This document shows positions 1 to 28,882 of a stretch of DNA of 64,000 nt, piece after piece. Positions within the stretch are counted from its first letter, which is position 1. Each line of letters begins with the position of its first letter. The translations under genes were made by a program, and so were the position numbers. Under the pieces are notes generated by a model. It saw only the letters and a list, made by a program, of their open reading frames with translations. It had not been told where the DNA came from and did no database searches. Location: IMG/VR virus record IMGVR_UViG_3300042564_002819, positions 62,001-126,000 of that record, one strand, 5' to 3'.

Positions 1-565
1 CTTTACTTAGGCTAATTGAAAACGTCTTGATAGCAGAATGTGACAAATCTATATCAATGTTTTTACACTGTCCTAGCCATGCTGCATCTATGTGAACGTC
101 GATAGAGTTTTTGTAACAAAAGTCTAAGAGTCGATCTATGTCGGGTATATTCCCTGCTGTTTTAACAGAAGGATAAGAAATAACTAGAACTGATCCTGAC
201 GGTATTGCAGAATAATGTGTTACTTTTAAAATTTTTGGATTTAATCTCCAATGATATGCATACTCGCCTTCGAATATTACTAACTTATTACTGTATCTGT
301 AATGCAGTTCGTCTATTTGCTGTGAAACACCTAATATAGCATCAGTAAATTTAAAAGACTCTAAATTTTTAATATTATTTAATTTAGAATTTTTAATCCA
401 AGCTGTAACTTTTTCTATAAAGTATTTTGTATATTGATTGCTATCTGTTGGATATTCTTTCATATCTAGAGAATCTCGAAACCCAATAATTTTACCAACT
501 AACATAGGAGGAATTCTAGATGTTAAAAACTTTTCTACACTTAAGTTATTATAATCCATATACAT
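1..565 (-). CDS. PLP-dependent fold-type-I enzyme (aminotransferase/decarboxylase-like), partial, runs off the left edge; not in the ORF track
   Basis: Manual translation from ATG 565 (or 559): MYMDYNNLSVEKFLTSRIPP...FEGEYAYHWR...LVISYPS...DVHIDAAWLG...TFSISLSK, open to base 1. D-A-A-W and S-L-S-K match the PLP-binding Asp and Schiff-base Lys motifs. Confidence 0.75.
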   Translation of the reverse strand, partial: MYMDYNNLSVEKFLTSRIPPMLVGKIIGFRDSLDMKEYPTDSNQYTKYFIEKVTAWIKNSKLNNIKNLESFKFTDAILGVSQQIDELHYRYSNKLVIFEGEYAYHWRLNPKILKVTHYSAIPSGSVLVISYPSVKTAGNIPDIDRLLDFCYKNSIDVHIDAAWLGQCKNIDIDLSHSAIKTFSISLSK

Positions 566-1916
566 CGCCTTTTAACAATGCCCATGTTTTTTCGCATACA
601 TCTTTTAGTTTTTCTTTTCTTGACTTATCTAATGTATTTGTATAATACCAAAACTTTTCTAAATCTTTAGAATGATCTTCTGAGTTCATAAATTTTATAT
701 ATTGATCTAATATCTTACAAAAATACTTAAAGTTTTCCGATTTTTCTTTTTCGGTTAAATCTAGCAACGAAATCTCTGCTTTAGCTTCAATCTTTTTTTG
801 TTCAAAGTAATTTTCTATCCACTGCTTACTTTCTTTTGGAAATATTTGAATATTTAAGAACTTTGGATTATGTAAAGGATGCGGACTTATTACCGGCTTG
901 TGTTGCACCTCAACATTAATTCTTTTAAATTTTTGTTTGATTTTCCAAAGCATCATATCAGGCAAGTGAACTAGATTATATGCTTGTATAGTAGCAGCCC
1001 ACCATATTTTAAAATCTCCTTCAGCAGCGTCTAATTTTCGCATATTTTCTTCTATCTTGTGCCATTTGCTAGGATTTCTTATATAATCGTTTATTGGTCC
1101 TACAGCATCAACACTCATTCCAATTTGTATACGTTCAAAATGCTTCCAAATATTCCAAGCACGTTCTGGAATATTAGTAATATTTGTATTGTATTCTATC
1201 ACAATAGATTTAGATCTTCCGGCATCTATGCACTTTTGTAAAAACTCGTAATGTTGGTCTATTAATAAAGGTTCCCCTCCAACGATGTATAATCGTTCTA
1301 TTGTAGGAATTTCTTGTTCCATTTCCTTCCAAAAAGCAGGCTTTTCGTACCAAGAATAGATATCAACTTCGGGTTTATGCTTTCCGTTTGCTGTTTTTAT
1401 TAATTTTACAGTTTGCCCGCTATCTTTATATTGATTTCCCCAAAGCAATACGTTGTCATCGTACCACTGACTGCTATCTGTAGGCCCACACATTCTACAT
1501 TTTAAATTGCAAAGATTTCCAAAACGAAGATCCATGTATTTTATAGGATTTTCTTCTAAATCAATTGATCCATCTTGCTTCGTTTTTGATATGGCATCTT
1601 CTTTATTAATTACATGAGCCCATATATCTCTTTCCCAACTAGCTCTACTTTCCATTCCTGATTCTGCTTCACGTTTACATCTAATGCATGATTCGTGATA
1701 TTCATTATTTAACATAGCTAATCTAACTTCTTTCATTAGATTGCTGTTTCTAAATCCGTGTATAGTTTCAGTTGATAGGTTGTAATTCGATCCTGTTTCT
1801 GTTTTTACTAATCCCTGATTAATACTAACATTTGCATTACAACATATTCTTACATCGCCGTTATTTCTTACATTTAAACTCATCCACGGCAGTGGACAAA
1901 ATGCGTTATTTTCCAT
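549..1916 (-). CDS. Radical SAM protein with N-terminal Twitch (half-SPASM) domain
   Basis: N-terminal CPLPW...ICC...CIRC, then CNLKCRMC, GGEP and YNTN. Confidence 0.9.
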   Translation of the reverse strand: MENNAFCPLPWMSLNVRNNGDVRICCNANVSINQGLVKTETGSNYNLSTETIHGFRNSNLMKEVRLAMLNNEYHESCIRCKREAESGMESRASWERDIWAHVINKEDAISKTKQDGSIDLEENPIKYMDLRFGNLCNLKCRMCGPTDSSQWYDDNVLLWGNQYKDSGQTVKLIKTANGKHKPEVDIYSWYEKPAFWKEMEQEIPTIERLYIVGGEPLLIDQHYEFLQKCIDAGRSKSIVIEYNTNITNIPERAWNIWKHFERIQIGMSVDAVGPINDYIRNPSKWHKIEENMRKLDAAEGDFKIWWAATIQAYNLVHLPDMMLWKIKQKFKRINVEVQHKPVISPHPLHNPKFLNIQIFPKESKQWIENYFEQKKIEAKAEISLLDLTEKEKSENFKYFCKILDQYIKFMNSEDHSKDLEKFWYYTNTLDKSRKEKLKDVCEKTWALLKGDVYGL

Positions 1917-1930
1917 TTATAAATCCTATA

Positions 1931-2980
1931 TTAAGAAAGTTGCTTATCGTTTTTATTTTTTCCATGTCCGCTACTAAACTCAAATTTTTTGCCACAAGTT
2001 CTACCGCATGTATATATTCTTTTAAATGTATCGTCTTGATTATTCCAGGAATTGTGTAAATATGAATTAAAAAAGTCATGTTTTAGTACATCCCAACCGT
2101 GTATTCTCATATCATTAAAACTTTCCCCATAAAGATTTTTTATATGATCAAAGCTAGGTTGTTGTTTGTTTTTATGATGGAAGTAACTTGGGGCCCCAAG
2201 CCAACAACACGGCCAAAGTTTCATCGTCATATCAACAAAAACAGTTTTATCAATTTTATATTTACAGCTAATCGGTGTTGTTAAAACATAATTTTCAAAA
2301 TCTTTAATTGAATCTTTATCTTTCTTGTTATGATTAGTAGGAGTATCCTCAACAACGTTGCCTTTTTTTGTAACAGTATTTTTTTGATCTTGATCTGCAA
2401 AACGAGCAGTATATTTAACTGTGAATTTTTTAAATCCAAGACTGTTTGCTAAGTTTTGTGCTTGTTCAATTTGATGATAGTTGTGTTGAAACTCTATAAA
2501 TGCCCATTCTGCATGGCCCCCGGCCGAAATAAATGCTTCTGCATTTTTAATTATTTTATTAAAATCACTACCAACTCTGTATAATTGATTTGTGTCTTCT
2601 AATCCGTCAATACTAAAAATAATTGACAACTTTTCTGCTGACTTTTTGGCTAATTCTGCCCACCATTCTGGCTTACGCATACTTCCATTTGTTGCAATTC
2701 TTACATGCTTTACATTTTTTGTTAAGCAATATTCATGAGCTGCGTCAAAGGTAGGACTTGCAATCACATCGCCGTAATTTCCGCAATGAAAGATTGTTAC
2801 CTGATTCTCTTTGAAAGGTTGCAAAATTATCTCATAGTCTGATACAGTTAGATCAGTTATTGGCATGCTAGGATTTAATGTATTGTTAAACATCCTAGCA
2901 CATTGAGGACATGCACAATTACATCTACTTGTATGATCTATTTGTATTTTTTGAATTTCTTCTAAATTTAAATAGTTCAC
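1931..2980 (-). CDS. Radical SAM protein with C-terminal Twitch-like domain
   Basis: CNCACPQC near the N-terminus, GNYGD, TNG, FSIDG; C-terminal C...WPCCW...CGRTC. Confidence 0.88.
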   Translation of the reverse strand: MNYLNLEEIQKIQIDHTSRCNCACPQCARMFNNTLNPSMPITDLTVSDYEIILQPFKENQVTIFHCGNYGDVIASPTFDAAHEYCLTKNVKHVRIATNGSMRKPEWWAELAKKSAEKLSIIFSIDGLEDTNQLYRVGSDFNKIIKNAEAFISAGGHAEWAFIEFQHNYHQIEQAQNLANSLGFKKFTVKYTARFADQDQKNTVTKKGNVVEDTPTNHNKKDKDSIKDFENYVLTTPISCKYKIDKTVFVDMTMKLWPCCWLGAPSYFHHKNKQQPSFDHIKNLYGESFNDMRIHGWDVLKHDFFNSYLHNSWNNQDDTFKRIYTCGRTCGKKFEFSSGHGKNKNDKQLS

Positions 2981-3630
2981 AGTCTATCAAATCCCCATCG
3001 ACGTTCAGCACAAAACCAGCAATTACCACAATGTTTTTCAAAGTTGTCAGTGTATTTCTCACAACTTCTAGTCATAGGAAATAATGTATCAAAGACATTA
3101 AAATAACGGTACAATTCTGCTACATCTCTTTTATTAAAGTTAATCAATGGATGACATGCCGTTCCTTCGTAGATGTTTTTTAGTCTTTCTCTGTCTGGTG
3201 GATCAGTCCATCCTCGCCAATATACACTTCTCGGTATTGCGTTTTTTGGAGGATTTTGTGTTATTCCAGCAAAATGAAATTGAATTTTATTGTTTTTATA
3301 TAAGTTATTAGTTAATAGTTGTTGTGTTTTAATATAATTTTCATCTTCTGGCAAAGGGCTATATGCTGTCTCGTGTTCCAAAAAAATATCGCCAAACTCT
3401 TTTTTATAAAACTCGACTATTTTTTTAGCAAACTGAATTTGAAAAGCTTTGCCTTCTTGATCAACAGTTATTGGAACAATTTTTAAGTCAGGCCTTTCTT
3501 CAACTACATATTTAGATAGTATGTATCCTGTAATTGCACTATCTGCACCCCCTGAGATTTTTAATCCCACAGATGAAACATTATTAAAAACTACAATATT
3601 TAGATTGTGTTTGCTATGAGGAATTATCAT
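2977..3630 (-). CDS. QueC-like PP-loop ATPase (7-cyano-7-deazaguanine synthase family)
   Basis: PP-loop ISGGADS; C-terminal Zn motif TRSC-x10-CGNCWFCAER; 217 aa. Confidence 0.75.
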   Translation of the reverse strand: MIIPHSKHNLNIVVFNNVSSVGLKISGGADSAITGYILSKYVVEERPDLKIVPITVDQEGKAFQIQFAKKIVEFYKKEFGDIFLEHETAYSPLPEDENYIKTQQLLTNNLYKNNKIQFHFAGITQNPPKNAIPRSVYWRGWTDPPDRERLKNIYEGTACHPLINFNKRDVAELYRYFNVFDTLFPMTRSCEKYTDNFEKHCGNCWFCAERRWGFDRL

Positions 3631-5042
3631 TGTAAAATCTCGGTAAAGATAGGAAAAACTTTTAAAAATTTATCTTCCCATTGTCGTTGTTTGTTAATAA
3701 GAGATATGTATTCTTTTGTTTCTGGTAATCTTTCCGACCAATCTTCACTGTTCATAAAATTTATAATACCTTTGAATCTTTTAATTCCGTAAGGATTTTC
3801 TAAAAACTGTTCTTTAGAAATGTTGTTTTCTTTTACTCCAGTAAACTGTTGCCAATTGTCTTCTATCCATGGATAAAAATCGTTTTCGTATTTGTCTGTA
3901 ATTTGTTTTTTAACATTTTTCGGCAATACTTTTACATTTAATTGAGGAGGCCAGTACGCAAAGTGCATGTTTATGCCGCCGGCTCCTAGTGGCCAAGAAT
4001 TTATCTTTTTAAAACCTTGTTGAGTTTTCCATTTTACAAACTCCGGTATATAAGCAATATTAAGAGCCATTATAGTAGTTGCCGTTGTTACTTCAACTTG
4101 AGGTGCAGTATTGTCTAGTTTCCAAAACACTTCTTCCTGGTGTTGCCACTGACTAGGATATCGAATATAATCATTGTGTTCTCCGTGTGCATCTATACTA
4201 TAATGAAATCTAACACGTTTAAACTCTGCCCATAGATCAAATAAATCACTACGCCATTCAACTGCATTGCTATTGTAACGTAACTCTATATTCTTTGCAT
4301 ACCCACGTCTAATGCATTCTTCTAATAGATCATAATGTTCATCTATAATAAGACTTTCGCCTCCGGCAAAGTATAGTTGATACATATGAGGAATTTGTTC
4401 AAACAAGTCTTGCCAGAATTTTGGATTATTTTTATGCCAATTATAGCTAGCACCGTGTACTCTGCCTTTATTTTCCCACTGACTAGTACCTTTTAATCTT
4501 TCATTTGTTATTTGAGGGTACAAAGAATTCCATTCTTTTACCCAGCCGCTCGAATCGTGAGGACTACACATTACACAAGCAAGCTGACACTTTGTACCCA
4601 TACGCAAGTCAATATACCGTATTTTCGGGGGTATAGAACCGTCAGCGGCAGTTTCATTAACTAATTCTTGTAGGTCAAAGCGGCTTGCCCAATAATCGGT
4701 TTCCCAATTTCTTTTACTAAGATGTCCAGCTTCTTCTTCTTTGTAACACTTTAGACAACTAGCAGGCTTTTCGCCACGAAGCATCATCTTACGAACATTA
4801 CGCATATATCCGCTGTTCCATGCTTCTTCTAGGCTAGTATGATTAAAATTAGCAGGAACGCCCGAGTCGTTCTTTACGACTCCAACTTCGCCACCACCGA
4901 TTTTGTTACTGCTGTCTGGATCTTGAACACTGCTGGCGTTACTTGTGCAACATGTTCGCATTTTTCCATCCGGTCTACTTGATAAGTGTAGCCACGGCAA
5001 TGCACAAAAGGTAGGCGAAATATGATTGTATTTTTCTGACAT
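3627..5042 (-). CDS. Radical SAM protein with N-terminal Twitch domain
   Basis: CALPW...TCC...CLKC, then CQLACVMC and AGGE; paralog of 549..1916. Confidence 0.9.
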   Translation of the reverse strand: MSEKYNHISPTFCALPWLHLSSRPDGKMRTCCTSNASSVQDPDSSNKIGGGEVGVVKNDSGVPANFNHTSLEEAWNSGYMRNVRKMMLRGEKPASCLKCYKEEEAGHLSKRNWETDYWASRFDLQELVNETAADGSIPPKIRYIDLRMGTKCQLACVMCSPHDSSGWVKEWNSLYPQITNERLKGTSQWENKGRVHGASYNWHKNNPKFWQDLFEQIPHMYQLYFAGGESLIIDEHYDLLEECIRRGYAKNIELRYNSNAVEWRSDLFDLWAEFKRVRFHYSIDAHGEHNDYIRYPSQWQHQEEVFWKLDNTAPQVEVTTATTIMALNIAYIPEFVKWKTQQGFKKINSWPLGAGGINMHFAYWPPQLNVKVLPKNVKKQITDKYENDFYPWIEDNWQQFTGVKENNISKEQFLENPYGIKRFKGIINFMNSEDWSERLPETKEYISLINKQRQWEDKFLKVFPIFTEILQ

Positions 5043-5050
5043 GTTAATAC

Positions 5051-6130
5051 TTATTTAAACTGTTCTGCAAAAGGATCAAACTCGATACCACATTTCATAG
5101 CACAAACTTTTAATTTTCCATTTTCGTAACTGTTTTCATGCCACGACGCTTCTATAAGATCAAAAATTTCTGTAGAAAATACACGTTCTAAACCATGTAT
5201 CTTAGCATTTATTGCATCTTTGCCGCCGGCAAAATTAATAAATTGCCATATTTGTTCTTGTTTAGGATCTTTTTGCCACCATTTGTACATTCGACCAGCA
5301 GTCCAACAACAAGGCATTGCTATCCCTTCTGCTGTAATAAACAAACTGCCTTCGTCTTTTACCTTGCATCTGATAGGAGTTTGTTGATAGTAAGCATCCA
5401 TGCTTCCGTATTTTATTTCTAACAATGTTTGCTTCTTTAATGCATTGTTTACATATTTGTCATCGGGCTTTTTAAGTTCGGTTGTTTGATTACCTTTTCG
5501 ATCAATTGCTTGGTGTGATTCTTTTTTCTTGCTATCTTGCGTAATAAATCTACCAGTTTTTTTAGCAACAAACTTTTCAAAGCCTAATTCCTTTGACAAC
5601 GCTTCTGCGTCTTCGACCTGATGTTGGTTATGTTCAAATATTAAAAAATCCCAACGTGCTCTGCCGCCGGCTGCAATAAATGCTCGCATACTACGTTCGA
5701 CTATATTCCAGTTAACACCTTGACGATACAAATGATTTGTATCACCGAGTCCGTCTACACTAAAAATAACAGTACCTGCTCTTCCAAGTATAGTTGCAAG
5801 TTCTTGCCACCATTCGGGATCACGGGCGCCAGCATTTGTATTCATGCTTAACCACATCTTAGGATTATTTTGTCTAAAATAGCGAAATATTTCTAGTGTG
5901 TCTCGAGCAACAATTGGATCTCCTAAATTACCGCACATATACATGGTGTTTAGCTGTGCTATAAATTCCGGTGTGAATATTTTTTTACAATCATCGAGTG
6001 TTAGTTCACTTAAATCTATATGAGGATTTAGTGCTCCGCCGTTTTGATTACGGTCACACATAGGGCAACTAGCTTGACAGTTTTGTGTTACTTCTAAGTG
6101 TATGGTTTTTATATCTTTATATTCATACAT
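5051..6130 (-). CDS. Radical SAM protein with C-terminal Twitch-like domain
   Basis: CQASCPMC, GNLGD, FSVDG; C...PCCW...CAMKC; paralog of 1931..2980. Confidence 0.88.
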   Translation of the reverse strand: MYEYKDIKTIHLEVTQNCQASCPMCDRNQNGGALNPHIDLSELTLDDCKKIFTPEFIAQLNTMYMCGNLGDPIVARDTLEIFRYFRQNNPKMWLSMNTNAGARDPEWWQELATILGRAGTVIFSVDGLGDTNHLYRQGVNWNIVERSMRAFIAAGGRARWDFLIFEHNQHQVEDAEALSKELGFEKFVAKKTGRFITQDSKKKESHQAIDRKGNQTTELKKPDDKYVNNALKKQTLLEIKYGSMDAYYQQTPIRCKVKDEGSLFITAEGIAMPCCWTAGRMYKWWQKDPKQEQIWQFINFAGGKDAINAKIHGLERVFSTEIFDLIEASWHENSYENGKLKVCAMKCGIEFDPFAEQFK

Positions 6131-6350
6131 CGTATATTAACTCTACATCCTTTCCTGGACCTATTTTACTAGGAAGATCACCGTATTGCTCTATGTACCA
6201 TTTAATTACAGCTATATACCAATTTTGACTATTATGATGTGCCTGTTTATTAAATTGAAAAATATTATTATTAGTTGCTTGTATTGTGCTTAACGCACGG
6301 GCACTTTCTTTTTGTAAATCTCTTAAACTTAACTTTGTTAAATCATTCAT
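6123..6350 (-). CDS. Small hypothetical protein (75 aa)
   Basis: Fills the gap exactly and overlaps both neighbours (ATGA coupling at 6347-6350). Confidence 0.7.
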   Translation of the reverse strand: MNDLTKLSLRDLQKESARALSTIQATNNNIFQFNKQAHHNSQNWYIAVIKWYIEQYGDLPSKIGPGKDVELIYDV

Positions 6351-7030
6351 TCTAATTCTAACATCCCATTAATGTTTTTAATGCCTTCGCTTGAAAAATT
6401 AAACATTCTTTCATTAAAAATTTCTTGTAGTTTGTCTTTATTTAAAACGTTTATTATTTTATATGGAGTTTTTCCAGGTTCGAATGTAGGACGTGGCGGA
6501 GAATCTTCAAATGGTAAATTTAATTTTTTATAATCAGTATAACTATCAAAAGAAAGATCTTCAAAATAAATTATGTCGTTATGAATGTTATTTTTTTTTA
6601 ATTCAGCAAACTTTGTCCAAAGATCAATTTTTCTTTCTAAAACTTCTGTAAATTGATACTCGTCTATACTAATAGTTGTTTTTTCGTAAGGAAAATCGTT
6701 AAAATTTTGTAATTTATTAGCTACAACATGACTAAATGTATTTTGAAACAGATCTTTTCTTAAAAGAAAGATTTTATACCAAATGTTGTTATTTAAAAAA
6801 AATTTAATAGTCTTAGGTCTCTTAATCTCATATATTTGATTTAAGTGAGTTTTTAATATAACATTTTTATGTAACAAACAGGTTTTAATTATACCTTTTA
6901 CATACGTGTCTGGCTGTTCAGTCATAAAGGGTTCTGTAAGAAAAAACGTATTCCTATAAAAATAACGATAGATGGTTCTAGCAAAATAACTACTTCCTGT
7001 TCTTGTACTAGATATTATAAGTATTTTCAT
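6347..7030 (-). CDS. Putative sulfotransferase (Stf0-like P-loop fold)
   Basis: N-terminal SSTRTGSSY resembles the 5'-PSB loop; LLRKDLFQNTFS resembles the 3'-PB motif; late IYFEDL. Confidence 0.6.
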   Translation of the reverse strand: MKILIISSTRTGSSYFARTIYRYFYRNTFFLTEPFMTEQPDTYVKGIIKTCLLHKNVILKTHLNQIYEIKRPKTIKFFLNNNIWYKIFLLRKDLFQNTFSHVVANKLQNFNDFPYEKTTISIDEYQFTEVLERKIDLWTKFAELKKNNIHNDIIYFEDLSFDSYTDYKKLNLPFEDSPPRPTFEPGKTPYKIINVLNKDKLQEIFNERMFNFSSEGIKNINGMLELE

Positions 7031-7878
7031 TATTTTATTCCAATTTTCATAAATCTTGTATACTTAGGTAAAACTAATTCACCCTTAAAAAGTGTATTAG
7101 TCATAGGTGCTTTTTTATCAAACTCGTCTAAATCTGTTGAACAATTAACATGTTCTGCAACTTCAAAATAATTATTTCCTTGTAAAATTACTAATTTTCC
7201 TGTTGGAATTTTTTCATACCAATCTTTAAAATTTTCTATATGCTCGCAACTAGTATTAATAATTGTATTAGGGATATCAGTTATAGGATAACTCATCCTG
7301 TTATTTGCATTGCTCCAATATTGCCAAGTATGTTCTCTGTAATCAATGTCTTGTATATTTTGTATTAATGACTTAAATCTCCACTGATCTGTAAACCAAG
7401 GTTTGTTAAAAACTTCTGCAATATCTACTGTGGTAGGATCAATATCAAAACTTCTAATTTTGTCAATTTTAATTCCGCTTTCAAACAACATTACTGCAAG
7501 TGTACCATACCACCCTGCACATAAAAAAACTGTACCTAACTCAACATCTAGTTTTTTTAATTCATTAACCAACCATAGTTTACTTTGTAATTGACCTCTA
7601 CTAAAACAATCGTTGTCAATCTTTAAATTGTTAACATAAAAGTTTTTGAATGCTGAGACAAATTGAGTATCAACGTAATTGTCTAATAATGGCCAAAGTT
7701 TCCATGCATTGTCTTCTAGAATTAGTTTTCTTAAATCTTCTTTGTTTTGATCATTAACTATGCGAAAAATACTGTTTAAATCTCGGTCAATATAAGCTCT
7801 ACGCAGGTCTGATAATTTATTATTATCAGAATAGAGTAATTCAAATCTATCTAATATCTCAAATATTTCTAGCATCAA
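7030..7878 (-). CDS. Putative class I SAM-dependent methyltransferase
   Basis: VFLCAGWYG (motif I-like), SFDIDP (acidic end of beta2), IINTSCEH. Confidence 0.6.
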   Translation of the reverse strand: MMLEIFEILDRFELLYSDNNKLSDLRRAYIDRDLNSIFRIVNDQNKEDLRKLILEDNAWKLWPLLDNYVDTQFVSAFKNFYVNNLKIDNDCFSRGQLQSKLWLVNELKKLDVELGTVFLCAGWYGTLAVMLFESGIKIDKIRSFDIDPTTVDIAEVFNKPWFTDQWRFKSLIQNIQDIDYREHTWQYWSNANNRMSYPITDIPNTIINTSCEHIENFKDWYEKIPTGKLVILQGNNYFEVAEHVNCSTDLDEFDKKAPMTNTLFKGELVLPKYTRFMKIGIK

Positions 7879-10432
7879 ACTGTTCCTTTAACCAATTAAA
7901 GTCGTTAATTTTTTTCAAAGTTTCGATGCTGTCTTTATTTCTTGCACCAAAAAGTGCACCAAATTTAGCACCATCTATTGCATATTTGCCAAACGGTCTA
8001 TCTTTGCCTGTTGTACACCATGTTTGCAATCTGTTTTGCGTTTCTGTATCTTTTTGCCTATCGATAATTTTACTGCTTAATTTAGTGCATTCTCTAAAAG
8101 CACTTTTCCAAGTATTAAACGGGTCTGTGTTAAATCCTGTGACATTAGAGATTTCTTGCACTGCTTTAAACTTGCTGCTAATGCTAGTTGTCATATCAGG
8201 CTTTGATGTATCCATATTAATAGTTAGTTCTGTAGGAAATAGTTTTATGCCGCCGTATCCATATACAAGATCATTAATCGGATTTACAGATCGCCATACA
8301 TGCACCATTTCTTTATCCCAACGAGGAACTTGATAATCAAATTTAAAATTAGATTCTACAAGTGCGTCGCCGTCGACAATCCAAAACATATCAGTTGAAC
8401 ATAGTTTAGCTGCCTCTATATGTGCCTGATGAATTCCTTTAACTCCGTGAACACGCTTTGCTCTAGGAAATCTGGCTATCAAATATTTGTAATACTCGTC
8501 TGCGTTGGGTTCTTGATAACTAATAAAAACAATGTCGTATAGTGCAGGTGTTGATATAACCACGTTGACTTCTTTTTTATGAGCAATAAATCTATAATCT
8601 AATTCTCTTTTACTGAATTTTGCCTGTTTACTGCAAAGAAGAATACCGTCATTGTACTTTCCATTTAAATATGCATGATTTATTGTTCTGTCATACGTAT
8701 TATCATGCGTAAAATATGTGTCGTATTTAAATCGTGTTGTTGGATTTACATAACTAGGAATAATCCAAAACATTTCAGTTTTAGAATTTTCAAGTGCATA
8801 CAAGTATTCGTCATAAGTGTCAACATTAAACTTTTCGTATTGTACAGGACCACTTGCTACAACAGGCCATTCTTTTCGGTTAAGTATAAACTTATGATTA
8901 ATTTCTTTTTCAGAAATTTTTCTATTTTTACTAAACAAGAAAACACCGTTATAATAGTCTTTATCATTTACTCGATGTATAAACGAATGATTTGTTGTTC
9001 TGTCATATTCGTTATCATGAGTAAAATAGATGTTAAACAAAAAGTTATCATCTATTTTTATATTATTGCTTGTACCCCAAAACATTTCAGTTTTAGAATT
9101 TTCAAGTGCATACAAGTATTCATCATACGTATCTATATTAAATCTGTCATATTGCACAGGACCACTTGCTACAATGGGCCATTCTTTTCTATTTACAATA
9201 AACCTATGTTCTATTTCTCGTTGAGTAAGTTTCTTATTTTTAGATAGTAAAAACACACCATTATATAAGTCATTGCCATCAACACGGTGTATAAAAGCGT
9301 GATTTATTGTTCTGTCATATTCGTTGTCATGAGTAAAGTATACATCAAAATCGAAAGAACTAAAGTCAATGTTATTACTAGTACCCCAGAACATTTCAGT
9401 TTTAGAATTTTCAAGTGCATACAAGTATTCGTTATAAGTGTCAACATTAAACTTTTCGTACTGTATAGGTCCACTTGCTACAATGGGCCATTCTTTTCTA
9501 TTAATAATAAATCTATGTTCTATTTCTTTTTTTGTCAAAACACAATGCTTACTACATAAGAAAACTCCATTGTATAAGTCTTGGTCTTTAACTCTGTGTA
9601 TAAAAGCGTGATTTGTCTTAGAGTCATAATTATCATGAGAAACATATATACGGTTTAACACACTGTCGTCAACACAAATGTTTCTCGACAACATCCAAAA
9701 CATATCAGTATTAGAATTTTTAAGTGCATACAAATATTCATCATACGTATCTATATTAAATTTGTCATATTGCACAGGACCACTTGCTACAATGGGCCAT
9801 TCTTTTCTATTAATAATAAATCTATGTTCTATTTCTTTTTTTGTTAAAGGTCTGTTTTTACTACAAAGAAATATTCCGTTATAGTAATCTGTTCCGTCAA
9901 CGCGGTGTATAAAAGCATGATTTTCATTTCTGTCATAGCTGTTATGATGAGAAATATAAAAATTGATTATTAGTTCGTTATTTTCTTTTACATTTCTTGA
10001 CAACATCCAAAACATTTCAGTTTTAGAATTTTCAAGTGCATACAAATATTCGTCGTAAGTGTCAATATAAAACTTGTCGTATTGTATCGGACTACTAGCT
10101 TTTATATCGACTTCTTTTTTATTAATAAAAAATCTATGAGAGATTTCTTTATTTGATATGTTAGAATTTTTTGGAACTAAACAAATTCCGTCGTAGTCTG
10201 TTCCGTTTAAAAAAACATGAATGTAATCTTTACTCCATTCATCTGGAGTATAAGAAAAATCAAAACTTTCTAATACATCACAGTCGTCCCAAATTACCCA
10301 AAACATTTCAGTCATAGAAATGTTTTGTGCTTGTCGAAAATCCACTGCTACTTTTGCTATAGGAAAACGAGCTTTTATTTTTTTAAAGTTTTCATTTGAA
10401 AACTTTTGTTTAATGTAAATTATGTCATACAT
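7859..10432 (-). CDS. Multi-repeat glycosyltransferase-like protein (tandem degenerate GT-A-like units plus an intact C-terminal DGD domain)
   Basis: C-terminal DIVFISYQEPNA...HGVKG..AH..AAK...FWIVDGD is paralogous to 27367..28299; it is preceded by internal ~103-aa repeats. Confidence 0.7.
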   Translation of the reverse strand: MYDIIYIKQKFSNENFKKIKARFPIAKVAVDFRQAQNISMTEMFWVIWDDCDVLESFDFSYTPDEWSKDYIHVFLNGTDYDGICLVPKNSNISNKEISHRFFINKKEVDIKASSPIQYDKFYIDTYDEYLYALENSKTEMFWMLSRNVKENNELIINFYISHHNSYDRNENHAFIHRVDGTDYYNGIFLCSKNRPLTKKEIEHRFIINRKEWPIVASGPVQYDKFNIDTYDEYLYALKNSNTDMFWMLSRNICVDDSVLNRIYVSHDNYDSKTNHAFIHRVKDQDLYNGVFLCSKHCVLTKKEIEHRFIINRKEWPIVASGPIQYEKFNVDTYNEYLYALENSKTEMFWGTSNNIDFSSFDFDVYFTHDNEYDRTINHAFIHRVDGNDLYNGVFLLSKNKKLTQREIEHRFIVNRKEWPIVASGPVQYDRFNIDTYDEYLYALENSKTEMFWGTSNNIKIDDNFLFNIYFTHDNEYDRTTNHSFIHRVNDKDYYNGVFLFSKNRKISEKEINHKFILNRKEWPVVASGPVQYEKFNVDTYDEYLYALENSKTEMFWIIPSYVNPTTRFKYDTYFTHDNTYDRTINHAYLNGKYNDGILLCSKQAKFSKRELDYRFIAHKKEVNVVISTPALYDIVFISYQEPNADEYYKYLIARFPRAKRVHGVKGIHQAHIEAAKLCSTDMFWIVDGDALVESNFKFDYQVPRWDKEMVHVWRSVNPINDLVYGYGGIKLFPTELTINMDTSKPDMTTSISSKFKAVQEISNVTGFNTDPFNTWKSAFRECTKLSSKIIDRQKDTETQNRLQTWCTTGKDRPFGKYAIDGAKFGALFGARNKDSIETLKKINDFNWLKEQFDARNI
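8543..10084 (-). repeat. Five intragenic tandem repeats of about 300-312 bp (~103 aa)
   Basis: Recurring QYD/EKF..DTYDEYLYALENSKTEMFW...HRF..NRKEWPIVASGP; near-identical DNA blocks such as catttcagttttagaattttcaagtgcatacaa near 8771, 9083, 9392 and 10013. Confidence 0.92.
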
Positions 10433-10435
10433 AAA

Positions 10436-11962
10436 TCACCAATTGTAACGAGAATCTAGAAATATGCTAGCAAATTCCGGAAATGTGTCAATAAAGTTTG
10501 TGCCGCGACGCTGATCGTGTTGCAATACATATTTTACAAAATTTATTTTATTTATATGCATTTCGTTGGGTGAAATATTTGACCTATCTCGAAAAATATC
10601 TAAATTTCTTTCTGCTTTTGCTATTTCAAAATCGTAAAATCCTGCAAAGTTAGATACGTCGGAATTTTTTTTCATAAAGTCAATTCCTTCTTCAAGGTAT
10701 GAAGAAAATTCTAACGGAAGCACATTCATGTTTTGCCATGCAGGATTTCTTAAAATAGGAATGTCAAACCAAATTCTTTGTCTGGGATGAATTTCGTAAT
10801 CCGGATGAGTATAATACGGATCATATATTGGTATGAATTGTATGCCCTGCTTGTCTTTGCTAAATTCCGTTCTTAAATCGAGTATATATTGTAAGTAATC
10901 CTTAAATTTAGGAAAACTTAATGCATTAAATGTATTAATAAATGTAACTGTAGTATTCTTAGTTTCATTTAAAAATCTACTAACGTTTTCTTGCATATAA
11001 GAATAGTTTAAACCTGTACGAATATACTCCGCTTGGGTTCCTACCGAGTCAACACTTACAAATAATGCAAGATTTTTTAGTGCCATATTTACATACCAAT
11101 GATTGTTAGCACCCGGGTTAAAGCGTTCTTTGTCTTCCCATATTTGTATTTCCTCGAGTTTCTTAATTTTTTCTATAAACTTGTCCATTAACTCAGGCTT
11201 TGGAGGAGAAAAATTACTAGTGATACTTAACTCTAACCAAGTGTTAGGATTTTCATATATGTAATCTAAAACTTTAAAAGTATTTGCATCCATAAGAGGC
11301 TCACCGCCTGTAATTCTAAACACTTCTAATTTTTTATATAACTCAGGCCACCATTTCCAAAAAGCAGATATATAAGGATTTTCCGATTGTTTTGATTTTA
11401 AAGGCATTAACCCTGCAGATGCAAGGGCATCTAAATTGTTATGCCCAACTTCATTATTGTTAATATCTAAAATTTTAAACTCGCCTAACTTTTTAACTTC
11501 GTCTTCCCACTCAGTGCTTAAATGCGGAGAACAATACATGCATTTTAAATTACATGCTTGATTAAAGTTAACTTCCATATATCTAGGATTTATGTTACTA
11601 GTGTCAAGAGAATCTATAATATCACTGCGAGAATTTTGTGCCCAATATTCTCCTGATCGATATATCCTGTCACTTCTATTTCCAGAATCTTCAATTTTCC
11701 AGCAATACGAGCATCCTGCCGGTCTTTCGCCTTTGAGCATTAAAGATCGTTCTGCTTTTTTTTCTTGTGTATTATGAAGAGCACTAGGATTTTTTTCTAT
11801 TTCAGGAATACTTATTTTATGTAACGGCGGATGATAGCAGCTATGTGTTGTTCCATTGGTTAAGTGCATCGACACTTGTGCCCATTTAGCATAACACATT
11901 GTTTTACTTATTTTTTTAAGTTGATTTTCGGCTATATCTGCAGATTGGTTATAATCACTCAT
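10436..11962 (-). CDS. Radical SAM protein with N-terminal Twitch domain (CxAKW/HSCYHP subtype)
   Basis: CYAKW...HSCYHP...CSYCW, then CNLKCMYC and TGGEP. Confidence 0.9.
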   Translation of the reverse strand: MSDYNQSADIAENQLKKISKTMCYAKWAQVSMHLTNGTTHSCYHPPLHKISIPEIEKNPSALHNTQEKKAERSLMLKGERPAGCSYCWKIEDSGNRSDRIYRSGEYWAQNSRSDIIDSLDTSNINPRYMEVNFNQACNLKCMYCSPHLSTEWEDEVKKLGEFKILDINNNEVGHNNLDALASAGLMPLKSKQSENPYISAFWKWWPELYKKLEVFRITGGEPLMDANTFKVLDYIYENPNTWLELSITSNFSPPKPELMDKFIEKIKKLEEIQIWEDKERFNPGANNHWYVNMALKNLALFVSVDSVGTQAEYIRTGLNYSYMQENVSRFLNETKNTTVTFINTFNALSFPKFKDYLQYILDLRTEFSKDKQGIQFIPIYDPYYTHPDYEIHPRQRIWFDIPILRNPAWQNMNVLPLEFSSYLEEGIDFMKKNSDVSNFAGFYDFEIAKAERNLDIFRDRSNISPNEMHINKINFVKYVLQHDQRRGTNFIDTFPEFASIFLDSRYNW

Positions 11963-11980: not shown

Positions 11981-12008
11981 ATTATAACTAATTTATTAAA
12001 AATGTCAA
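11981..12008 (-). promoter_or_regulatory. Sigma70-type promoter TTGACA-N16-TATAAT
   Basis: Perfect consensus hexamers on the minus strand (-35 at 12008-12003, -10 at 11986-11981), followed by SD AAGGA and ATG at 11962. Confidence 0.8.
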
Positions 12009-12850
12009 GCGTTAGGGTATTTTTCTTTAATAAAATTTGCTAGTTCTTCTGCTATTACTTTATATCCATCAACATTAGGATGAATACAATTGGTTAAATG
12101 TTTCTTTGGATAATCTAAATTGCTGTAATGGTTATAGTATTGCGGCTGCATTTCATCTGAAAGCCAGTTATCTTTTCTAACTAATAATTCTACAAATGTC
12201 TTATAATCTCTAAAATTGTGTATATAACATGACCAATCTACTTTATTTGCTAATTTGTCGCAATGCTCATATAAAAAGTCTTTGCCACGGTCATCAAATG
12301 CGTTTGCTAAAACAAATTTTAAATTGTTGGCTTTACAAAAAGTTTGCACTTCTAAAATATTACATAAAGTTTCGATTGCAGTTGCATCCTCGGCATAAAC
12401 TTGTCTTGTGTATATATCCCATAATTTACTGTTGCCTAGGTGCGGCCACACTGTTTGAAAATTATAATGACCTGCATCTTTAGTATCACTTTTATAACAA
12501 ATTTTAGTATTTTTCCAAGAATCTCTAAAAAAATCAAATCGTTCATACCCACTCATCATGAACACTACAATTCCGTTTTCAACTTTTGAAAAATCTATAT
12601 TTGTAAGATACAGACTTCTTGCACTGCCTCTATTTCCTATGCCGCGTTGTCCGAGATTGTAAGGAATGTATTCTGACAAATAATCTCTACATAATACATT
12701 AACCCAACTATTTCTGTGTTCGTGTTCTATAAGATGATAACTTTTGTGCATTGGAAGATTAATTTTTCCATTGTATTCTTTCCAGATCTCTTCTGGATAA
12801 CCGCCTTCGCCTTGTGTCCAACTACATCCTAAGCCAAATAAAACATTCAT
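12005..12850 (-). CDS. SGNH/GDSL-hydrolase-like protein (possible O-acyl transferase/esterase)
   Basis: Block I-like GCSWTQG, NLGQRGIGN, and C-terminal IHPN..GYK.IA. Confidence 0.6.
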   Translation of the reverse strand: MNVLFGLGCSWTQGEGGYPEEIWKEYNGKINLPMHKSYHLIEHEHRNSWVNVLCRDYLSEYIPYNLGQRGIGNRGSARSLYLTNIDFSKVENGIVVFMMSGYERFDFFRDSWKNTKICYKSDTKDAGHYNFQTVWPHLGNSKLWDIYTRQVYAEDATAIETLCNILEVQTFCKANNLKFVLANAFDDRGKDFLYEHCDKLANKVDWSCYIHNFRDYKTFVELLVRKDNWLSDEMQPQYYNHYSNLDYPKKHLTNCIHPNVDGYKVIAEELANFIKEKYPNA

Positions 12851-13890
12851 TATCTAAAATCCTCGTATTTGTCATCACGTACAGTATCTAATGTAACACA
12901 GTGTGGGCCACCGCTTAATGTTCTTGCATGTCGCATTTGTACTGGCATTACATCAAAACCACGTGACTCTAATTGTTTGATTAAAGGAATTTGATTTTTT
13001 TCAACTGCAACTAAATTTTCGCTAATACTTAGCACATTCATACTTAACCAAGGACTTGCAGGAGCCCAGTGATCTATAAATGGTGTAGGAATTGGATCTT
13101 CTGCCCAAATTTTATCCCAAGATTTAAAATAGGCAGGAATGTTATTATTGTTAACTCTGCTCGGATTTAACAATACCTTTCCTGGAGCCAAAGGTAATAT
13201 TGTTGTATCGACATGAACATAAGCATATATGTTATCCATAATATGTACATTATATTTTTCACCCAATGTTGATTGTAACCATTGAGATCCTAATTTATTA
13301 CCAGAATTTGAAACAAGATAAAAAATGTCTCGACCGCATTTAATAACGTTGGCTGCGTCGAACGCAATTTCGTATTCGGTTAAAGTAGGTTTAGACAAAT
13401 CTGATCTGTCATAAAGGTCATCTAACAGTTCAGGTTTTGGAGCAGATATCCATCTGCTACCTTTAGAAAAGTATTCCTTAAAAAGTTTTCTATAACCTAA
13501 GGTTTCAAAGTATCTAGATCTTAACGGCATCGGAGTTTCTATTAGCATATCTCCAATTACTAAAACACTATCTCTAGGACAATACATGTAGTATCCATCA
13601 GACGTCCAGTCCGGTGTTGCACATAGCAACCCTAAGTTTTTTATTTCAGGACGATGAACTGTAACATTAACAGATTCTAATTGTTTTTGAAATGCATCTA
13701 AATCTTCTACAGTTTCGTCTATAACTTGTTCAGGGTATTTTCCTGCTGGCAATCCGGAAACTGTATCGTAATTTGCATAGTCAACACAATGAATGTCATG
13801 TTTTTTTGTTTTAGGTATTTGTGCATTTTCTGCCCGACCTAATATTACTTCTTTTAGAGTTCCCCATTCTGTGTTCGAGTTAACTTTCAT
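12850..13890 (-). CDS. Amidinotransferase (glycine / inosamine-phosphate amidinotransferase family)
   Basis: VNSNTEWGTLKEVILG, YCPRD, and catalytic-type FDAAN (Asp), HVDTT (His), GGPHC (Cys). Confidence 0.9.
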   Translation of the reverse strand: MKVNSNTEWGTLKEVILGRAENAQIPKTKKHDIHCVDYANYDTVSGLPAGKYPEQVIDETVEDLDAFQKQLESVNVTVHRPEIKNLGLLCATPDWTSDGYYMYCPRDSVLVIGDMLIETPMPLRSRYFETLGYRKLFKEYFSKGSRWISAPKPELLDDLYDRSDLSKPTLTEYEIAFDAANVIKCGRDIFYLVSNSGNKLGSQWLQSTLGEKYNVHIMDNIYAYVHVDTTILPLAPGKVLLNPSRVNNNNIPAYFKSWDKIWAEDPIPTPFIDHWAPASPWLSMNVLSISENLVAVEKNQIPLIKQLESRGFDVMPVQMRHARTLSGGPHCVTLDTVRDDKYEDFR

Positions 13891-14536
13891 ATATTCTGTA
13901 AGGCCAAAAGACCTTTTGCTCCTTTAAATCTTTATAGGTTAAGTTACTGCCGGTATCTGGATTTTCATCAGGTAGATTTTCTAAAAGTAATAATCCCGAA
14001 GCTGCTTCTTCCGGAGTCATGTACATGTGATAACCAATACATTCATAATCGTCCTCGTCGTGCTTAACGTATTTGTGACGACCATCGTAAATCATTGGTC
14101 TGCACCAATTTATAAAATCATAATCGTCGGTTAAAATGACACCACCTTTTCCTATTTTAAGAGTTTTTCTATGATGGAAACTAACACAGTAATAAGAACC
14201 TTTTACATACATGCCTCTTTTAAACCTAGTAGCACCATCTATAATAGGGGTAGGTTCTAAGTAATATTCTCCACTCCATTCTTTTTCAACAAATTTAATC
14301 CTATTTCCTGCATGTATTATTTGCATAGGTGTACTTGCGTAAGTATGCGAAGGTATGCTAATTATTTGATTTTTTATGCCTAAGTATTTCATACAAAGAA
14401 ACATAGCATTTGAACAACTGTCAACACAAACAGCGTATTTTGATCCTGCATATTCTGCTAATTTGTTTTCAAAAAGTGTTACTGCATCCCAAGGATCGTT
14501 AATTTCATATCCTTTATTTTTCAGTTGGGATATCAT
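13880..14536 (-). CDS. Short DegT/DnrJ/EryC1/StrS-family PLP aminotransferase
   Basis: FENKLAEYAGSKYAVCVDSCSNA, IIDGA, SFHHRKTLKIGKGG. Likely start ATG 14536 after GGGGA (ORF track starts at 14608). Confidence 0.8.
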   Translation of the reverse strand: MISQLKNKGYEINDPWDAVTLFENKLAEYAGSKYAVCVDSCSNAMFLCMKYLGIKNQIISIPSHTYASTPMQIIHAGNRIKFVEKEWSGEYYLEPTPIIDGATRFKRGMYVKGSYYCVSFHHRKTLKIGKGGVILTDDYDFINWCRPMIYDGRHKYVKHDEDDYECIGYHMYMTPEEAASGLLLLENLPDENPDTGSNLTYKDLKEQKVFWPYRIYES

Positions 14537-15254: not shown

Positions 15255-15267
15255 CTTAGTACTTTCT

Positions 15268-28299: not shown

Positions 28300-28882
28300 T
28301 AATAACCTCGTGATAATATGTTTCAAGTCGTTTAATAGTATATACACTTAATAATCCAACAGTGTGTTCTATTTGATTTTCAAATAAAATTTCATAGTCA
28401 TTGTAAATTAAATCTGTTAAATTAACAATAATGCATCTTTCCAATTGATGCGGATCATTAAATCTAGTAATGCTAAACATTAAGGGTCTGTCTAAAGATA
28501 CTTTTTTTGTTTTTAAGTTTTCTTTTATAGACTCATCTAGTTTAAAAACCCATTTTTTATTTTCAATGTCTTGTACTATAGTTAAGTCTGGCCTAGAACT
28601 ACTCTTATATTCTGGTATTTTATGTACCTGTGTATTAATATCAAAGACAACTTCTTCGTTGTTAAATCTATGCTTTAATATATAGTTCTTTTTTATTGTA
28701 TCAAAGATTACTTGATAAGTGTGAAACTGTTCCTGACCTGTGATTAAATTATAAACTTCGTCAACGTCTACCTCAATATACAATCCTTCGCTGTCGTTAG
28801 AATTTCCTACTGAGAGTAAATTTCCCAAATCGTCAAAATAAACAAATTTTTTGTTTGAAACATATAGATTATCTGTGTTCAC
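28289..28882 (-). CDS. Hypothetical protein
   Basis: 197-aa ORF filling the operon gap; no recognisable motif. Confidence 0.7.
   Translation of the reverse strand: MNTDNLYVSNKKFVYFDDLGNLLSVGNSNDSEGLYIEVDVDEVYNLITGQEQFHTYQVIFDTIKKNYILKHRFNNEEVVFDINTQVHKIPEYKSSSRPDLTIVQDIENKKWVFKLDESIKENLKTKKVSLDRPLMFSITRFNDPHQLERCIIVNLTDLIYNDYEILFENQIEHTVGLLSVYTIKRLETYYHEVINGK

What the first reader, a model, noticed from the sequence alone, without database searches (positions are those of the whole stretch)
549..6130. Duplicated dyad of opposite-architecture radical SAM enzymes flanking a QueC-like gene
Seen: in transcription order [C-terminal-Twitch rSAM 5051..6130, N-terminal-Twitch rSAM 3627..5042], QueC-like, [C-terminal-Twitch rSAM 1931..2980, N-terminal-Twitch rSAM 549..1916]. 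The same two-gene unit occurs twice with clear paralogy. Known: SPASM/Twitch domains normally lie C-terminal to the rSAM core, and the N-terminal arrangement is functionally uncharacterised to my knowledge. Inference: the two types work as a pair (heterodimer or sequential oxidation/epimerisation), each dyad acting on a different position or sugar.
Basis: partly seen in the sequence, partly recalled or inferred. Interest (0 to 1): 0.7.

Follow-up and report, generated by a model that had tools for sequence, protein, structure and literature searches.

The report
Radical SAM toolkit island in giant phage
The two gene pairs are real, but they are a small part of a 48-kb, highly variable block of 17 radical SAM enzyme genes beside the tail-fibre genes of a giant T4-like lake phage, and the two enzyme types sometimes work together but are not fixed partners.

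Summary
All five ORFs sit at the stated coordinates. Two are N-terminal-Twitch radical SAM (rSAM) enzymes of the catalogued family NF033640. Two are C-terminal-Twitch rSAMs. Between the pairs lies a PP-loop ATPase that is only QueC-like.

The context changes the picture:
- The window comes from a T4-like phage of about 330 kb found in lake water.
- A roughly 48-kb island next to its tail genes holds 17 rSAM genes, three PP-loop paralogs and nucleotide-sugar enzymes.
- The two architectures look like circular permutations of one enzyme. Cores align at E 4e-21 and Twitch modules at E 1e-4.
- The paralogy is ancient, at 33-34% identity. Each gene has closer relatives (43-60%) in Bdellovibrionota chromosomes, where they sit next to GT2 glycosyltransferases.

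Pairing is partly supported:
- For: C-then-N adjacency is enriched (42 observed, 24 expected). The C1 and N1 orthologs co-occur in 47 of 49 loci. Six natural C/N fusion proteins exist, in both orders.
- Against: partners swap freely (Mantel r = -0.07), and most N-types have no C-type nearby.
- The PP-loop gene follows N-types more consistently than N-types follow C-types (34 observed, 12 expected).

The most likely function is combinatorial tailoring of a sugar or glycan. The substrate is unknown.

The parts
5051..6130 (-). C1: radical SAM enzyme (359 aa) with a C-terminal Twitch domain. It is the most conserved gene of the island.
   Evidence: CxxxCxxC at residue 18; C255, C274, C275, C343 and C347. 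AF2 model pLDDT 91.8; best PDB matches are BlsE, SkfB, SuiB and anSME. It has 2918 homologs, and the best 120 are 75-92% identical.
3627..5042 (-). N1: radical SAM enzyme (471 aa) with an N-terminal Twitch domain, family NF033640.
   Evidence: 413.9 bits against a cut-off of 170. Pfam SPASM at residues 13-100; CxxxCxxC at 152. AF2 pLDDT 87.1. Orthologs at 57-87% identity in nearly all related phages and about 60% in Bacteriovoracaceae.
2977..3630 (-). Q: PP-loop ATPase (217 aa). It is QueC-like only in its SGGxDS motif and C-terminal Cys cluster, and is one of three paralogs in the genome.
   Evidence: TIGR00364 scores 25 bits against a cut-off of 150. Invariant SGG-DS and C190, C201, C204, C207. 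Its profile matches only the PP-loop region of AsnB, TtuA, ThiI and NadE. N-then-Q adjacency is 34 observed against 11.6 expected.
1931..2980 (-). C2': second C-terminal-Twitch radical SAM enzyme (349 aa).
   Evidence: 33% identical to C1. 52-56% identical to Pseudobdellovibrionaceae and Bdellovibrionia genes that head a C, B12-rSAM, N operon.
549..1916 (-). N2: second N-terminal-Twitch radical SAM enzyme (455 aa), family NF033640.
   Evidence: 368.3 bits. 34% identical to N1. 42-45% identical to Bdellovibrionota genes.
2..565 (-). Start of a 293-aa protein of unknown function that follows N2. The same N2-like then 293-aa-like order occurs in bacteria.
   Evidence: The ORF runs off the window. 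No Pfam family. Homologs at 31-39% identity follow N2-like genes in L092, L122, L134 and L144, and a GT2 follows in L134.
6123..6350 (-). Conserved 75-aa helical protein directly upstream of C1, function unknown.
   Evidence: Present upstream of C1 in most related phage loci at 61-85% identity. Conserved along its whole length, with no variable core. No Pfam or PHROG family.
7030..10432 (-). Two conserved island core genes of unknown function (282 aa and 857 aa).
   Evidence: Orthologs at 37-73% and 49-65% identity upstream of C1 in most related loci. No family found.
10436..11962 (-). Third N-terminal-Twitch radical SAM enzyme in the window (508 aa).
   Evidence: NF033640, 310.6 bits. 44-48% identical to Bdellovibrionales genes.
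11981..12008 (-). Perfect sigma-70-type promoter consensus in the 42-nt gap upstream of the third N-type. It may mark the start of the transcription unit that runs through the dyads.
   Evidence: TTGACA-16-TATAAT, 12 of 12 matches. The overall promoter count is not above the shuffle expectation, so this is a lead only.
12005..25187 (-). Middle of the island: a DegT-like fragment, a 2OG-Fe(II) oxygenase, a UDP-glucose/GDP-mannose dehydrogenase-like gene, a B12-binding rSAM methyltransferase-like gene, an SDR sugar epimerase/reductase and several unknowns.
   Evidence: PF01041 1.8e-21, PF13640 6e-15, TIGR03026 1.4e-43, NF033712 8e-72 and PF01370 1.5e-37.
25994..27370 (-). Fourth N-terminal-Twitch radical SAM enzyme in the window (458 aa), near the tail-fibre end of the island.
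   Evidence: NF033640, 312.8 bits in the six-frame search. CxxxCxxC at residue 139.

Best explanation
The five genes are one stretch of a co-directional, tightly packed gene array. The array lies in a roughly 48-kb hypervariable biosynthetic island next to the baseplate and tail-fibre genes of a T4-like giant phage (about 330 kb) from lake water. The island is a combinatorial toolkit. It holds 8 N-terminal-Twitch rSAMs, 4 C-terminal-Twitch rSAMs, 2 other rSAMs with C-terminal Cys clusters, 3 B12-rSAMs, 3 PP-loop ATPases, 2OG oxygenases and nucleotide-sugar enzymes.

Shown: the two Twitch architectures are homologs related by something like a circular permutation. Both keep a four-Cys auxiliary-cluster module.

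Inferred:
- Each enzyme is an independent tailoring catalyst that abstracts an H atom from a carbohydrate, either a nucleotide-linked sugar or a glycan. The auxiliary cluster acts as the electron sink or source. The likely chemistry is dehydrogenation, epimerisation, dehydration or decarboxylation, as in BtrN and BlsE.
- The PP-loop enzymes adenylate a carboxylate or carbonyl that results and amidate it.
- C-types and N-types act in the same pathways and in some lineages physically together, as the fusions suggest. Partnerships are nevertheless facultative and interchangeable, not a fixed cognate dyad.
- Rapid reshuffling of the cassettes between related phages points to a product under diversifying selection, most likely a surface glycan of the virion or of the infected cell.
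For: Context:
- The record is viral, and a 330-kb contig of the same phage is 93% complete.
- It encodes a Gp23 capsid protein at E 2e-102 and gp25, tail-collar and VgrG-like genes.
- It holds 17 rSAM genes.

Permutation:
- Cores align at E 3.7e-21.
- The N-type N-terminus aligns to the C-type C-terminus at E 1.3e-4.
- The N-type N-terminus matches the BtrN Twitch domain.
- SPASM hits occur at opposite ends of the two types.

Sugar link:
- The island has a UGDH-like gene, an SDR epimerase and a DegT-like gene.
- The closest solved relative of the C-type is the sugar-nucleoside decarboxylase BlsE, by sequence profile (9e-10) and by Foldseek (4e-11).
- In bacterial chromosomes, orthologous rSAM sets are followed or preceded by GT2 glycosyltransferases or a carbamoyltransferase.

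Linkage without fixed partners: adjacency statistics, Mantel test, co-occurrence counts and fusions.

Hypervariability: 69 N-type and 29 C-type clusters at 70% identity within 80 related loci, and 53 distinct gene orders.
Against: - No substrate is identified, and no rSAM of either family has been characterised.
- No recognisable glycosyltransferase or nucleotidyltransferase lies in the 122-kb record. The near-complete genome has only one GT1, about 20 kb beyond the island.
- The N-type's best sequence matches in the PDB are peptide-modifying enzymes, TigE and SkfB.
- The island also carries an Asp/Asn-hydroxylase-like gene and a YhhC-like oxygenase, which fit peptide chemistry.
- About half of the island's proteins have no detectable family.
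- The adjacency statistics come from related phages and are not phylogenetically independent.
Confidence: 0.5

Rival explanations
1. One reading: each C-type/N-type pair is a cognate two-enzyme unit, either a heterodimer or a strictly coupled two-step reaction. The unit was duplicated so that each dyad serves a different position or sugar.
For: - Six natural C/N fusions in both orders, two of them on independent contigs.
- C-then-N adjacency of 42 against 24.5 expected, with a directional bias.
- C1-like then N1-like order is kept in Halobacteriovoraceae operons at 45-47% and 58-60% identity.
- The mutual-best paralogy of both members.
Against: - Adjacent partners do not co-vary (Mantel r = -0.07).
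- C1 and N1 are separated by 1-8 genes in 39 of 47 loci.
- N-types outnumber C-types 190 to 108 in phage islands and about 50 to 10 in five Bdellovibrionales genomes, often as N-only tandem arrays of up to 7.
- In L087 and L091 the C2' ortholog is followed by a B12-rSAM and a different N-type, not by N2.
- Each gene is closer to bacterial genes than to its paralog, so the dyads were not duplicated in place.
Confidence: 0.2
2. The island matures a ribosomal peptide or heavily modifies a phage protein such as a tail fibre. The Twitch rSAMs would act as epimerases or cross-linkers, the B12-rSAMs as C-methyltransferases and the 2OG enzymes as hydroxylases, in the style of proteusins.
For: - SPASM/Twitch rSAMs are typically peptide maturases. 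The N-type profile's best PDB hits are TigE (1e-15) and SkfB (4e-12).
- The island has a YhhC-like 2OG oxygenase and an Asp/Asn beta-hydroxylase-like gene.
- A conserved 75-aa protein sits directly upstream of C1.
- The island lies next to the tail-fibre genes.
Against: - The 75-aa protein is conserved along its whole length, with no variable core.
- No PqqD/RRE domain, leader peptidase or exporter was found.
- Small ORFs beside bacterial N-type arrays do not look like precursor peptides.
- Bona fide nucleotide-sugar enzymes and GT2 neighbours are present.
Confidence: 0.17
3. The island hypermodifies phage DNA as an anti-restriction measure. The QueC-like genes and rSAMs would build a deazapurine-like or sugar-type base modification.
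For: - QueC-like PP-loop genes occur in several copies.
- Phage DNA hypermodification pathways can use rSAM enzymes (PMC8989533, listed).
- Hypervariability fits an arms race.
Against: - There is no TGT/DpdA in either near-complete genome.
- There is no QueD in this phage.
- The PP-loop proteins fail the QueC model.
- Orthologous gene sets sit in bacterial chromosomes next to GT2 genes.
- The island lies in the structural and host-recognition region, not the replication region.
Confidence: 0.08

Closest known systems
Hypervariable host-recognition cluster (HRC) of aquatic T4-like myophages: pelagimyophages and cyanomyophages (PMC7029224). Also the multi-rSAM phages CP220/CPt10 (PMC2853527) and a T4-like marine viral genome with 12 rSAM genes (PMC5332604).
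   Same: It is a T4-type phage (Gp23). A large non-syntenic island lies beside the tail-fibre and giant structural genes. Cassettes of rSAM genes differ between close relatives.
   Different: - The genome is about twice as large, 330-382 kb.
- There are 17 rSAM genes in one island.
- The island is dominated by two permuted Twitch families plus PP-loop genes. No glycosyltransferase is recognisable inside it.
- The earlier papers only noted the genes. They did not classify them or propose a function.
NF033640 N_Twi_rSAM (NCBIfam: twitch domain-containing radical SAM protein)
   Same: N1 and N2, two further window genes and three more in the record score above the family cut-off and match over the full model length.
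   Different: The family name describes architecture only. I found no characterised member and no paper on an N-terminal Twitch domain.
BtrN and BlsE: Twitch-domain rSAM enzymes acting on aminocyclitol or sugar-nucleoside substrates
   Same: - Each has a CxxxCxxC core plus one auxiliary Cys cluster module.
- BlsE is the best solved match of the C-type.
- The BtrN Twitch domain matches the N-type N-terminus.
- A DegT-type aminotransferase and a UGDH-like gene lie nearby, as in those pathways.
   Different: - Identity is only 12-20% and TM-scores are about 0.5.
- In the N-type the module order is reversed.
- No evidence bears on the actual reaction.
QueC (7-cyano-7-deazaguanine synthase) and other PP-loop amidotransferases
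   Same: It has an SGGxDS PP-loop and a C-terminal Cys cluster. Weak QueC and NAD-synthase hits occur.
   Different: - It is far below the QueC cut-off (25 against 150 bits).
- There is no QueD and no TGT/DpdA in the phage.
- It is a multi-copy family that follows N-type rSAMs.

Membership tests
NF033640 N_Twi_rSAM | Full-length match above the curated cut-off of 170 bits | tested here: met
   413.9 bits (3627..5042) and 368.3 bits (549..1916), covering model positions 1-397 and 2-396 of 398.
NF033640 N_Twi_rSAM | A Cys-rich Twitch module on the N-terminal side of the CxxxCxxC core | tested here: met
   C13, C31/32, C96 and C99 precede C152/156/159. Pfam SPASM at 13-100 and 7-81. The profile matches the BtrN Twitch domain (residues 185-262) at E 5e-5.
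NF033640 N_Twi_rSAM | Binding of an auxiliary [4Fe-4S] cluster | not testable with these tools
   This needs iron/sulfide analysis, EPR or a solved structure.
SPASM/Twitch subgroup of radical SAM enzymes (C-type, canonical order) | An N-terminal CxxxCxxC core followed by a C-terminal Cys-rich domain of the SPASM family | tested here: met
   CxxxCxxC at residues 18 and 20. The C-terminal domains of 21 of 28 family members hit PF13186, best E 4.2e-9, although the two window proteins do not reach it alone. The best folds are BlsE, SkfB, SuiB and anSME.
SPASM/Twitch subgroup of radical SAM enzymes (C-type, canonical order) | Twitch (one cluster, 3-4 Cys) as opposed to SPASM (two clusters, 7-8 Cys) | tested here: met
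   Only five conserved C-terminal Cys: C255, C274, C275, C343 and C347.
QueC (TIGR00364 / PF06508) | Score above the curated equivalog cut-off | tested here: not met
   25.4 bits against 150.3. Only the last 50 residues match.
QueC (TIGR00364 / PF06508) | Pathway partners for preQ0 synthesis and insertion (QueD, TGT/DpdA) in the same genome | tested here: not met
   No PF01702 in G001 or G002. No PF01242 in G000 or G001.
   Mantel r = -0.07. C1 and N1 are adjacent in 8 of 47 loci. 5 of 181 bacterial N-types follow a C-type.
   Six fusions among the best 150 family representatives, in both orders, on reproducible contigs.
   The one complex job gave no verdict, which is evidence neither for nor against binding.
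Host-recognition cluster of T4-like aquatic myophages | A T4-type capsid and a hypervariable island beside the tail-fibre or giant structural genes, with rSAM cassettes | tested here: met
   Gp23 at E 1.9e-102. gp25, tail-collar and VgrG-like genes and a 4603-aa protein lie upstream. There are 53 distinct gene orders in related loci.
Host-recognition cluster of T4-like aquatic myophages | Island bounded by VrlC and gp14, as described for pelagimyophages | not tested
   The 4603-aa protein was not compared with VrlC, and gp14 was not sought.

The most novel reading that the evidence does not exclude
N-terminal-Twitch and C-terminal-Twitch rSAMs are circular permutants of one catalytic unit. They have radiated into hundreds of paralog families in giant aquatic phages and in predatory Bdellovibrionota. 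Together with PP-loop amidating enzymes, they form a shuffleable enzyme kit that performs carbohydrate chemistry not yet described, some of it through real C/N two-enzyme complexes. Phages would use the kit to diversify a surface glycan involved in host recognition or exclusion.
Probability: 0.3. Interest if true: 0.8.

Novelty: new variant of a known kind. Interest (0 to 1): 0.6.

Why it matters
Radical SAM cassettes in the variable host-recognition regions of aquatic T4-like phages have been noted for more than a decade without explanation. This work contributes four things.

- It sorts the cassettes into a few recurrent families.
- It shows that the unusual N-terminal-Twitch architecture is a permuted relative of a large unnamed C-terminal-Twitch family, which has 1,836 representative clusters.
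- It ties both families to Bdellovibrionota gene clusters that carry glycosyltransferases.
- It supplies concrete pairs to test: the C/N fusions, the C1/N1/third-rSAM operon and the N-type/PP-loop pairs.

If the chemistry is new sugar tailoring, this is a large untapped enzyme reservoir. It could also explain how giant phages vary their own surface or that of their host.

Tried and rejected
- Complex prediction of C1 with N1: score 0.00, below the mark, controls not run, no verdict. I do not use it as evidence either way.
I repeated it with the narrower alignment A3. That biases the bacterial sample toward relatives of N2.
- Cultured phages: no DNA match and only 22-26% protein matches.
- Island unknowns against PHROGs, Pfam and the Atlas (857, 282, 227 and 75 aa, and others): nothing informative.
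- Precursor-peptide-like small ORFs beside bacterial N-type arrays: none convincing.
- 7-deazaguanine DNA modification: rejected, because there is no TGT/DpdA and no QueD in this phage.
- Glycosyltransferase or nucleotidyltransferase inside the 122-kb record: none found.
- Recent in-place duplication of the dyad: rejected, because each gene has closer bacterial relatives.
- Promoter and terminator scan: counts at chance level.
- RNA runs: none on record that hold the sequence, so expression is untested.
- My early assumption that the phage was marine was wrong. The runs that hold it are lake and river water.

Full report
**Observation.** They are 5051..6130 (359 aa), 3627..5042 (471 aa), 2977..3630 (217 aa), 1931..2980 (349 aa) and 549..1916 (455 aa). 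They are separated by 8- and 14-nt gaps or overlap by 4 nt.

The 471- and 455-aa proteins score 414 and 368 bits against NCBIfam NF033640, 'twitch domain-containing radical SAM protein', whose cut-off is 170. Pfam SPASM hits their first 80-100 residues, upstream of the CxxxCxxC motif. A profile of 40 family members matches the Twitch domain of BtrN with its N-terminal positions 5-78, at E 5e-5.

The 359- and 349-aa proteins carry CxxxCxxC at residues 18 and 20. Their conserved C-terminal pattern is C-x18-CC-x65-CxxxC. The C-terminal domains of 21 of 28 family members hit Pfam SPASM, best E 4e-9. The two opposite architectures are therefore real.

The N-types are mutual best hits in the genome at 34% identity, and the C-types at 33%. 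Contigs from independent lake-water runs reproduce the gene order without differences.

**Context.** The window is part of a 121,779-bp viral record. A 330-kb contig of the same phage is 93% complete, and a related one of 382 kb is complete.

The phage has a T4-type Gp23 capsid protein at E 2e-102. The upstream half of the window encodes gp25-like, tail-collar and VgrG-like/M15 proteins and a 4603-aa protein.

Downstream of these lies an island of about 48 kb that runs past the window's start. It contains:
- 17 rSAM genes: 8 N-Twitch, 4 C-Twitch, 2 others with C-terminal Cys clusters and 3 B12-binding;
- 3 PP-loop paralogs;
- a UDP-glucose/GDP-mannose-dehydrogenase-like gene, an SDR sugar epimerase/reductase and a DegT-like fragment;
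- two 2OG oxygenases.

The finding is thus a small sample of a much larger feature.

**Relation of the two architectures.** Profile-profile comparison aligns the rSAM cores at E 3.7e-21. It aligns the N-type N-terminal module (residues 19-98) with the C-type C-terminal module (262-345) at E 1.3e-4, including the GxxxPCC hairpin. The other pairings that I compared did not align. The two types therefore look like circular permutants of one enzyme.

AF2 models are confident, at pLDDT 91.8 and 87.1. The C-type is nearest to BlsE, SkfB, SuiB and anSME. For the N-type, most of the best solved structures align only from about residue 135 onward.

**Is the pair a unit?** I gathered 80 related viral loci and classed their genes with profiles built from this genome's paralogs.

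The diversity is extreme. There are 69 N-type and 29 C-type clusters at 70% identity and 53 non-redundant gene orders.

Within the islands, C-then-N adjacency is enriched (42 observed, 24.5 +- 3.9 by label shuffling) and N-then-C is depleted (13 against 24). Even so, only 39% of C-types are followed by an N-type, and only 22% of N-types are preceded by a C-type. These loci are related to one another, so the shuffle test overstates significance.

At ortholog level, C1 (74-100% identical) and N1 (57-87%) are core island genes. They co-occur in 47 of 49 loci with enough downstream sequence, but they are adjacent in only 8 and lie 1-8 genes apart in the rest.

Among 16 distinct adjacent pairs, C-C and N-N identities are uncorrelated (Mantel r = -0.07, p = 0.68). 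The same C1 sits beside unrelated N-types, and N1 follows unrelated C-types.

The second dyad is found together only in three related loci, and in one of them another gene separates the two.

**Bacteria.** A scan of species-representative genomes found relatives mostly in Bdellovibrionota. The query alignment was built around N2.
- Of 75 loci with N-types, 13 have any C-type within 8 kb.
- 5 of 181 N-types follow a C-type, and 111 have an N-type neighbour.
- Five Bdellovibrionales genomes carry 4-16 NF033640 copies each, in tandem arrays of up to seven.
- They carry only 10 full-length C-types, four of which lie far from any N-type.

Ortholog-level counterparts do exist, however.
- Halobacteriovoraceae and Bacteriovoracaceae contigs carry an operon of C1-like (45-47%), N1-like (58-60%), a third rSAM (63-65% to the gene at genome position 103061) and a GT2 glycosyltransferase. 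They also carry N2-like (42%), a homolog of the 293-aa protein and a GT2.
- Other MAGs carry C2'-like (52-56%), B12-rSAM (65-67%) and N-type (55%) genes in one operon.

Each dyad gene is therefore closer to a bacterial gene than to its in-genome paralog, and the trees interleave phage and bacterial sequences (support values were not examined). The dyads were not duplicated in place.

**Fusions.** A profile search of 1.8 billion representatives found 1,836 C-type family clusters at E <= 1e-30. Six of the best 150 are fusions of a full-length C-type and a full-length N-type: four as C-N and two as N-C.

Two of them recur on independently assembled contigs. The contigs range from 32% to 63% GC. 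This Rosetta-stone evidence shows that members of the two families do work together in several lineages.

**The QueC-like gene.** It fails the QueC model, at 25 against 150 bits. It keeps an SGGxDS PP-loop and a C-terminal Cys cluster. Its profile matches only the PP-loop region of asparagine synthetase, TtuA, ThiI and NAD synthetase.

The genome has three such paralogs, and related loci have 83. These genes follow N-types 34 times against 11.6 +- 2.9 expected, and they precede the third rSAM class 13 times against 2.6. That enrichment is stronger than for C-then-N.

Neither near-complete phage genome has TGT/DpdA, and this phage lacks QueD. A deazaguanine role is therefore unlikely.

**Function.** For a carbohydrate substrate:
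- the nucleotide-sugar enzymes in the island;
- BlsE as the nearest solved relative;
- GT2 or carbamoyltransferase neighbours in bacteria.

Against it:
- no glycosyltransferase is detectable in the island;
- the N-type's best PDB sequence hits are peptide maturases;
- peptide-type oxygenases are present.

I rate sugar or glycan tailoring at about 0.5, peptide or protein modification at about 0.17, and DNA modification at about 0.08.

**Literature.** Earlier papers noted rSAM cassettes in the hypervariable host-recognition cluster of pelagimyophages (PMC7029224). Others reported 11-12 rSAM genes in Campylobacter phages (PMC2853527) and 12 in a T4-like marine viral genome (PMC5332604). None of the three offers a function for them. 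No paper in the library mentions an N-terminal Twitch domain.

**Verdict.** The feature is a new variant of a known but unexplained kind of phage island.

Noticed in passing
L092, L113, L101, L123, L127 (genomes G003-G007); L087, L091, L122, L134, L144: Bdellovibrionota genomes of 1.9-4.1 Mb carry 4-16 NF033640 genes each, in tandem arrays of up to seven. They share island genes with this phage at up to 67% identity. This points to gene exchange, and possibly to the phage's host range.
   Followed up: partly
P0121, P0131, P0132, P0243, P0179, P0198; loci L169-L172: Natural single-ORF fusions of C-terminal-Twitch and N-terminal-Twitch rSAMs occur in both orders, on AT-rich and GC-rich contigs.
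   Followed up: partly
window 38969-52780 (-): A 4603-aa ORF lies between the baseplate and tail-fibre genes. It may correspond to the giant VrlC-type structural protein of T4-like aquatic phages. I did not analyse it.
   Followed up: no
window 11981-12008 (-): A perfect TTGACA-16-TATAAT promoter consensus sits in the 42-nt gap upstream of the third N-type rSAM gene. Overall promoter-like counts are at chance level.
   Followed up: no
window 13880-15254 (-): The DegT-like ORF is short, at 242 aa. Only about 70 residues match the roughly 360-residue family model, and the ORF overlaps the upstream 2OG oxygenase ORF by 95 nt. It may be truncated or divergent.
   Followed up: no
window 5100-6112: In independent lake metagenome assemblies, the C1 gene breaks into short unitigs at higher depth, with loose ends at 6112. 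This fits a conserved gene shared by co-occurring phage variants that have different flanks.
   Followed up: partly
L125, L126 (Haliscomenobacter MAG): N-type genes alternate with unknown genes, and a carbamoyltransferase lies nearby. L126 also holds homologs of the phage genes at window 27367-30564, at 28-48% identity. Part of the island's tail-proximal end is therefore syntenic with a Bacteroidota chromosome.
   Followed up: no
window 57889-60387 (-): A VgrG-like spike protein (DUF2345) is fused to an M15 D-Ala-D-Ala carboxypeptidase domain. It is probably a cell-wall-piercing tail tip.
   Followed up: no
G002:C1:150680-151834 and G002:C1:340179-340589: The related 382-kb phage encodes a 1331-aa ORF with both GT2 and GT1 domains, and a QueD-like gene. 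Both lie far from its rSAM island.
   Followed up: no
L088, L097: Short contigs binned as Neisseriaceae and Crocinitomicaceae MAGs carry C1 and N1 at 63-74% and 58% identity, with 32-36% GC. They are probably phage contigs that were mis-binned.
   Followed up: no
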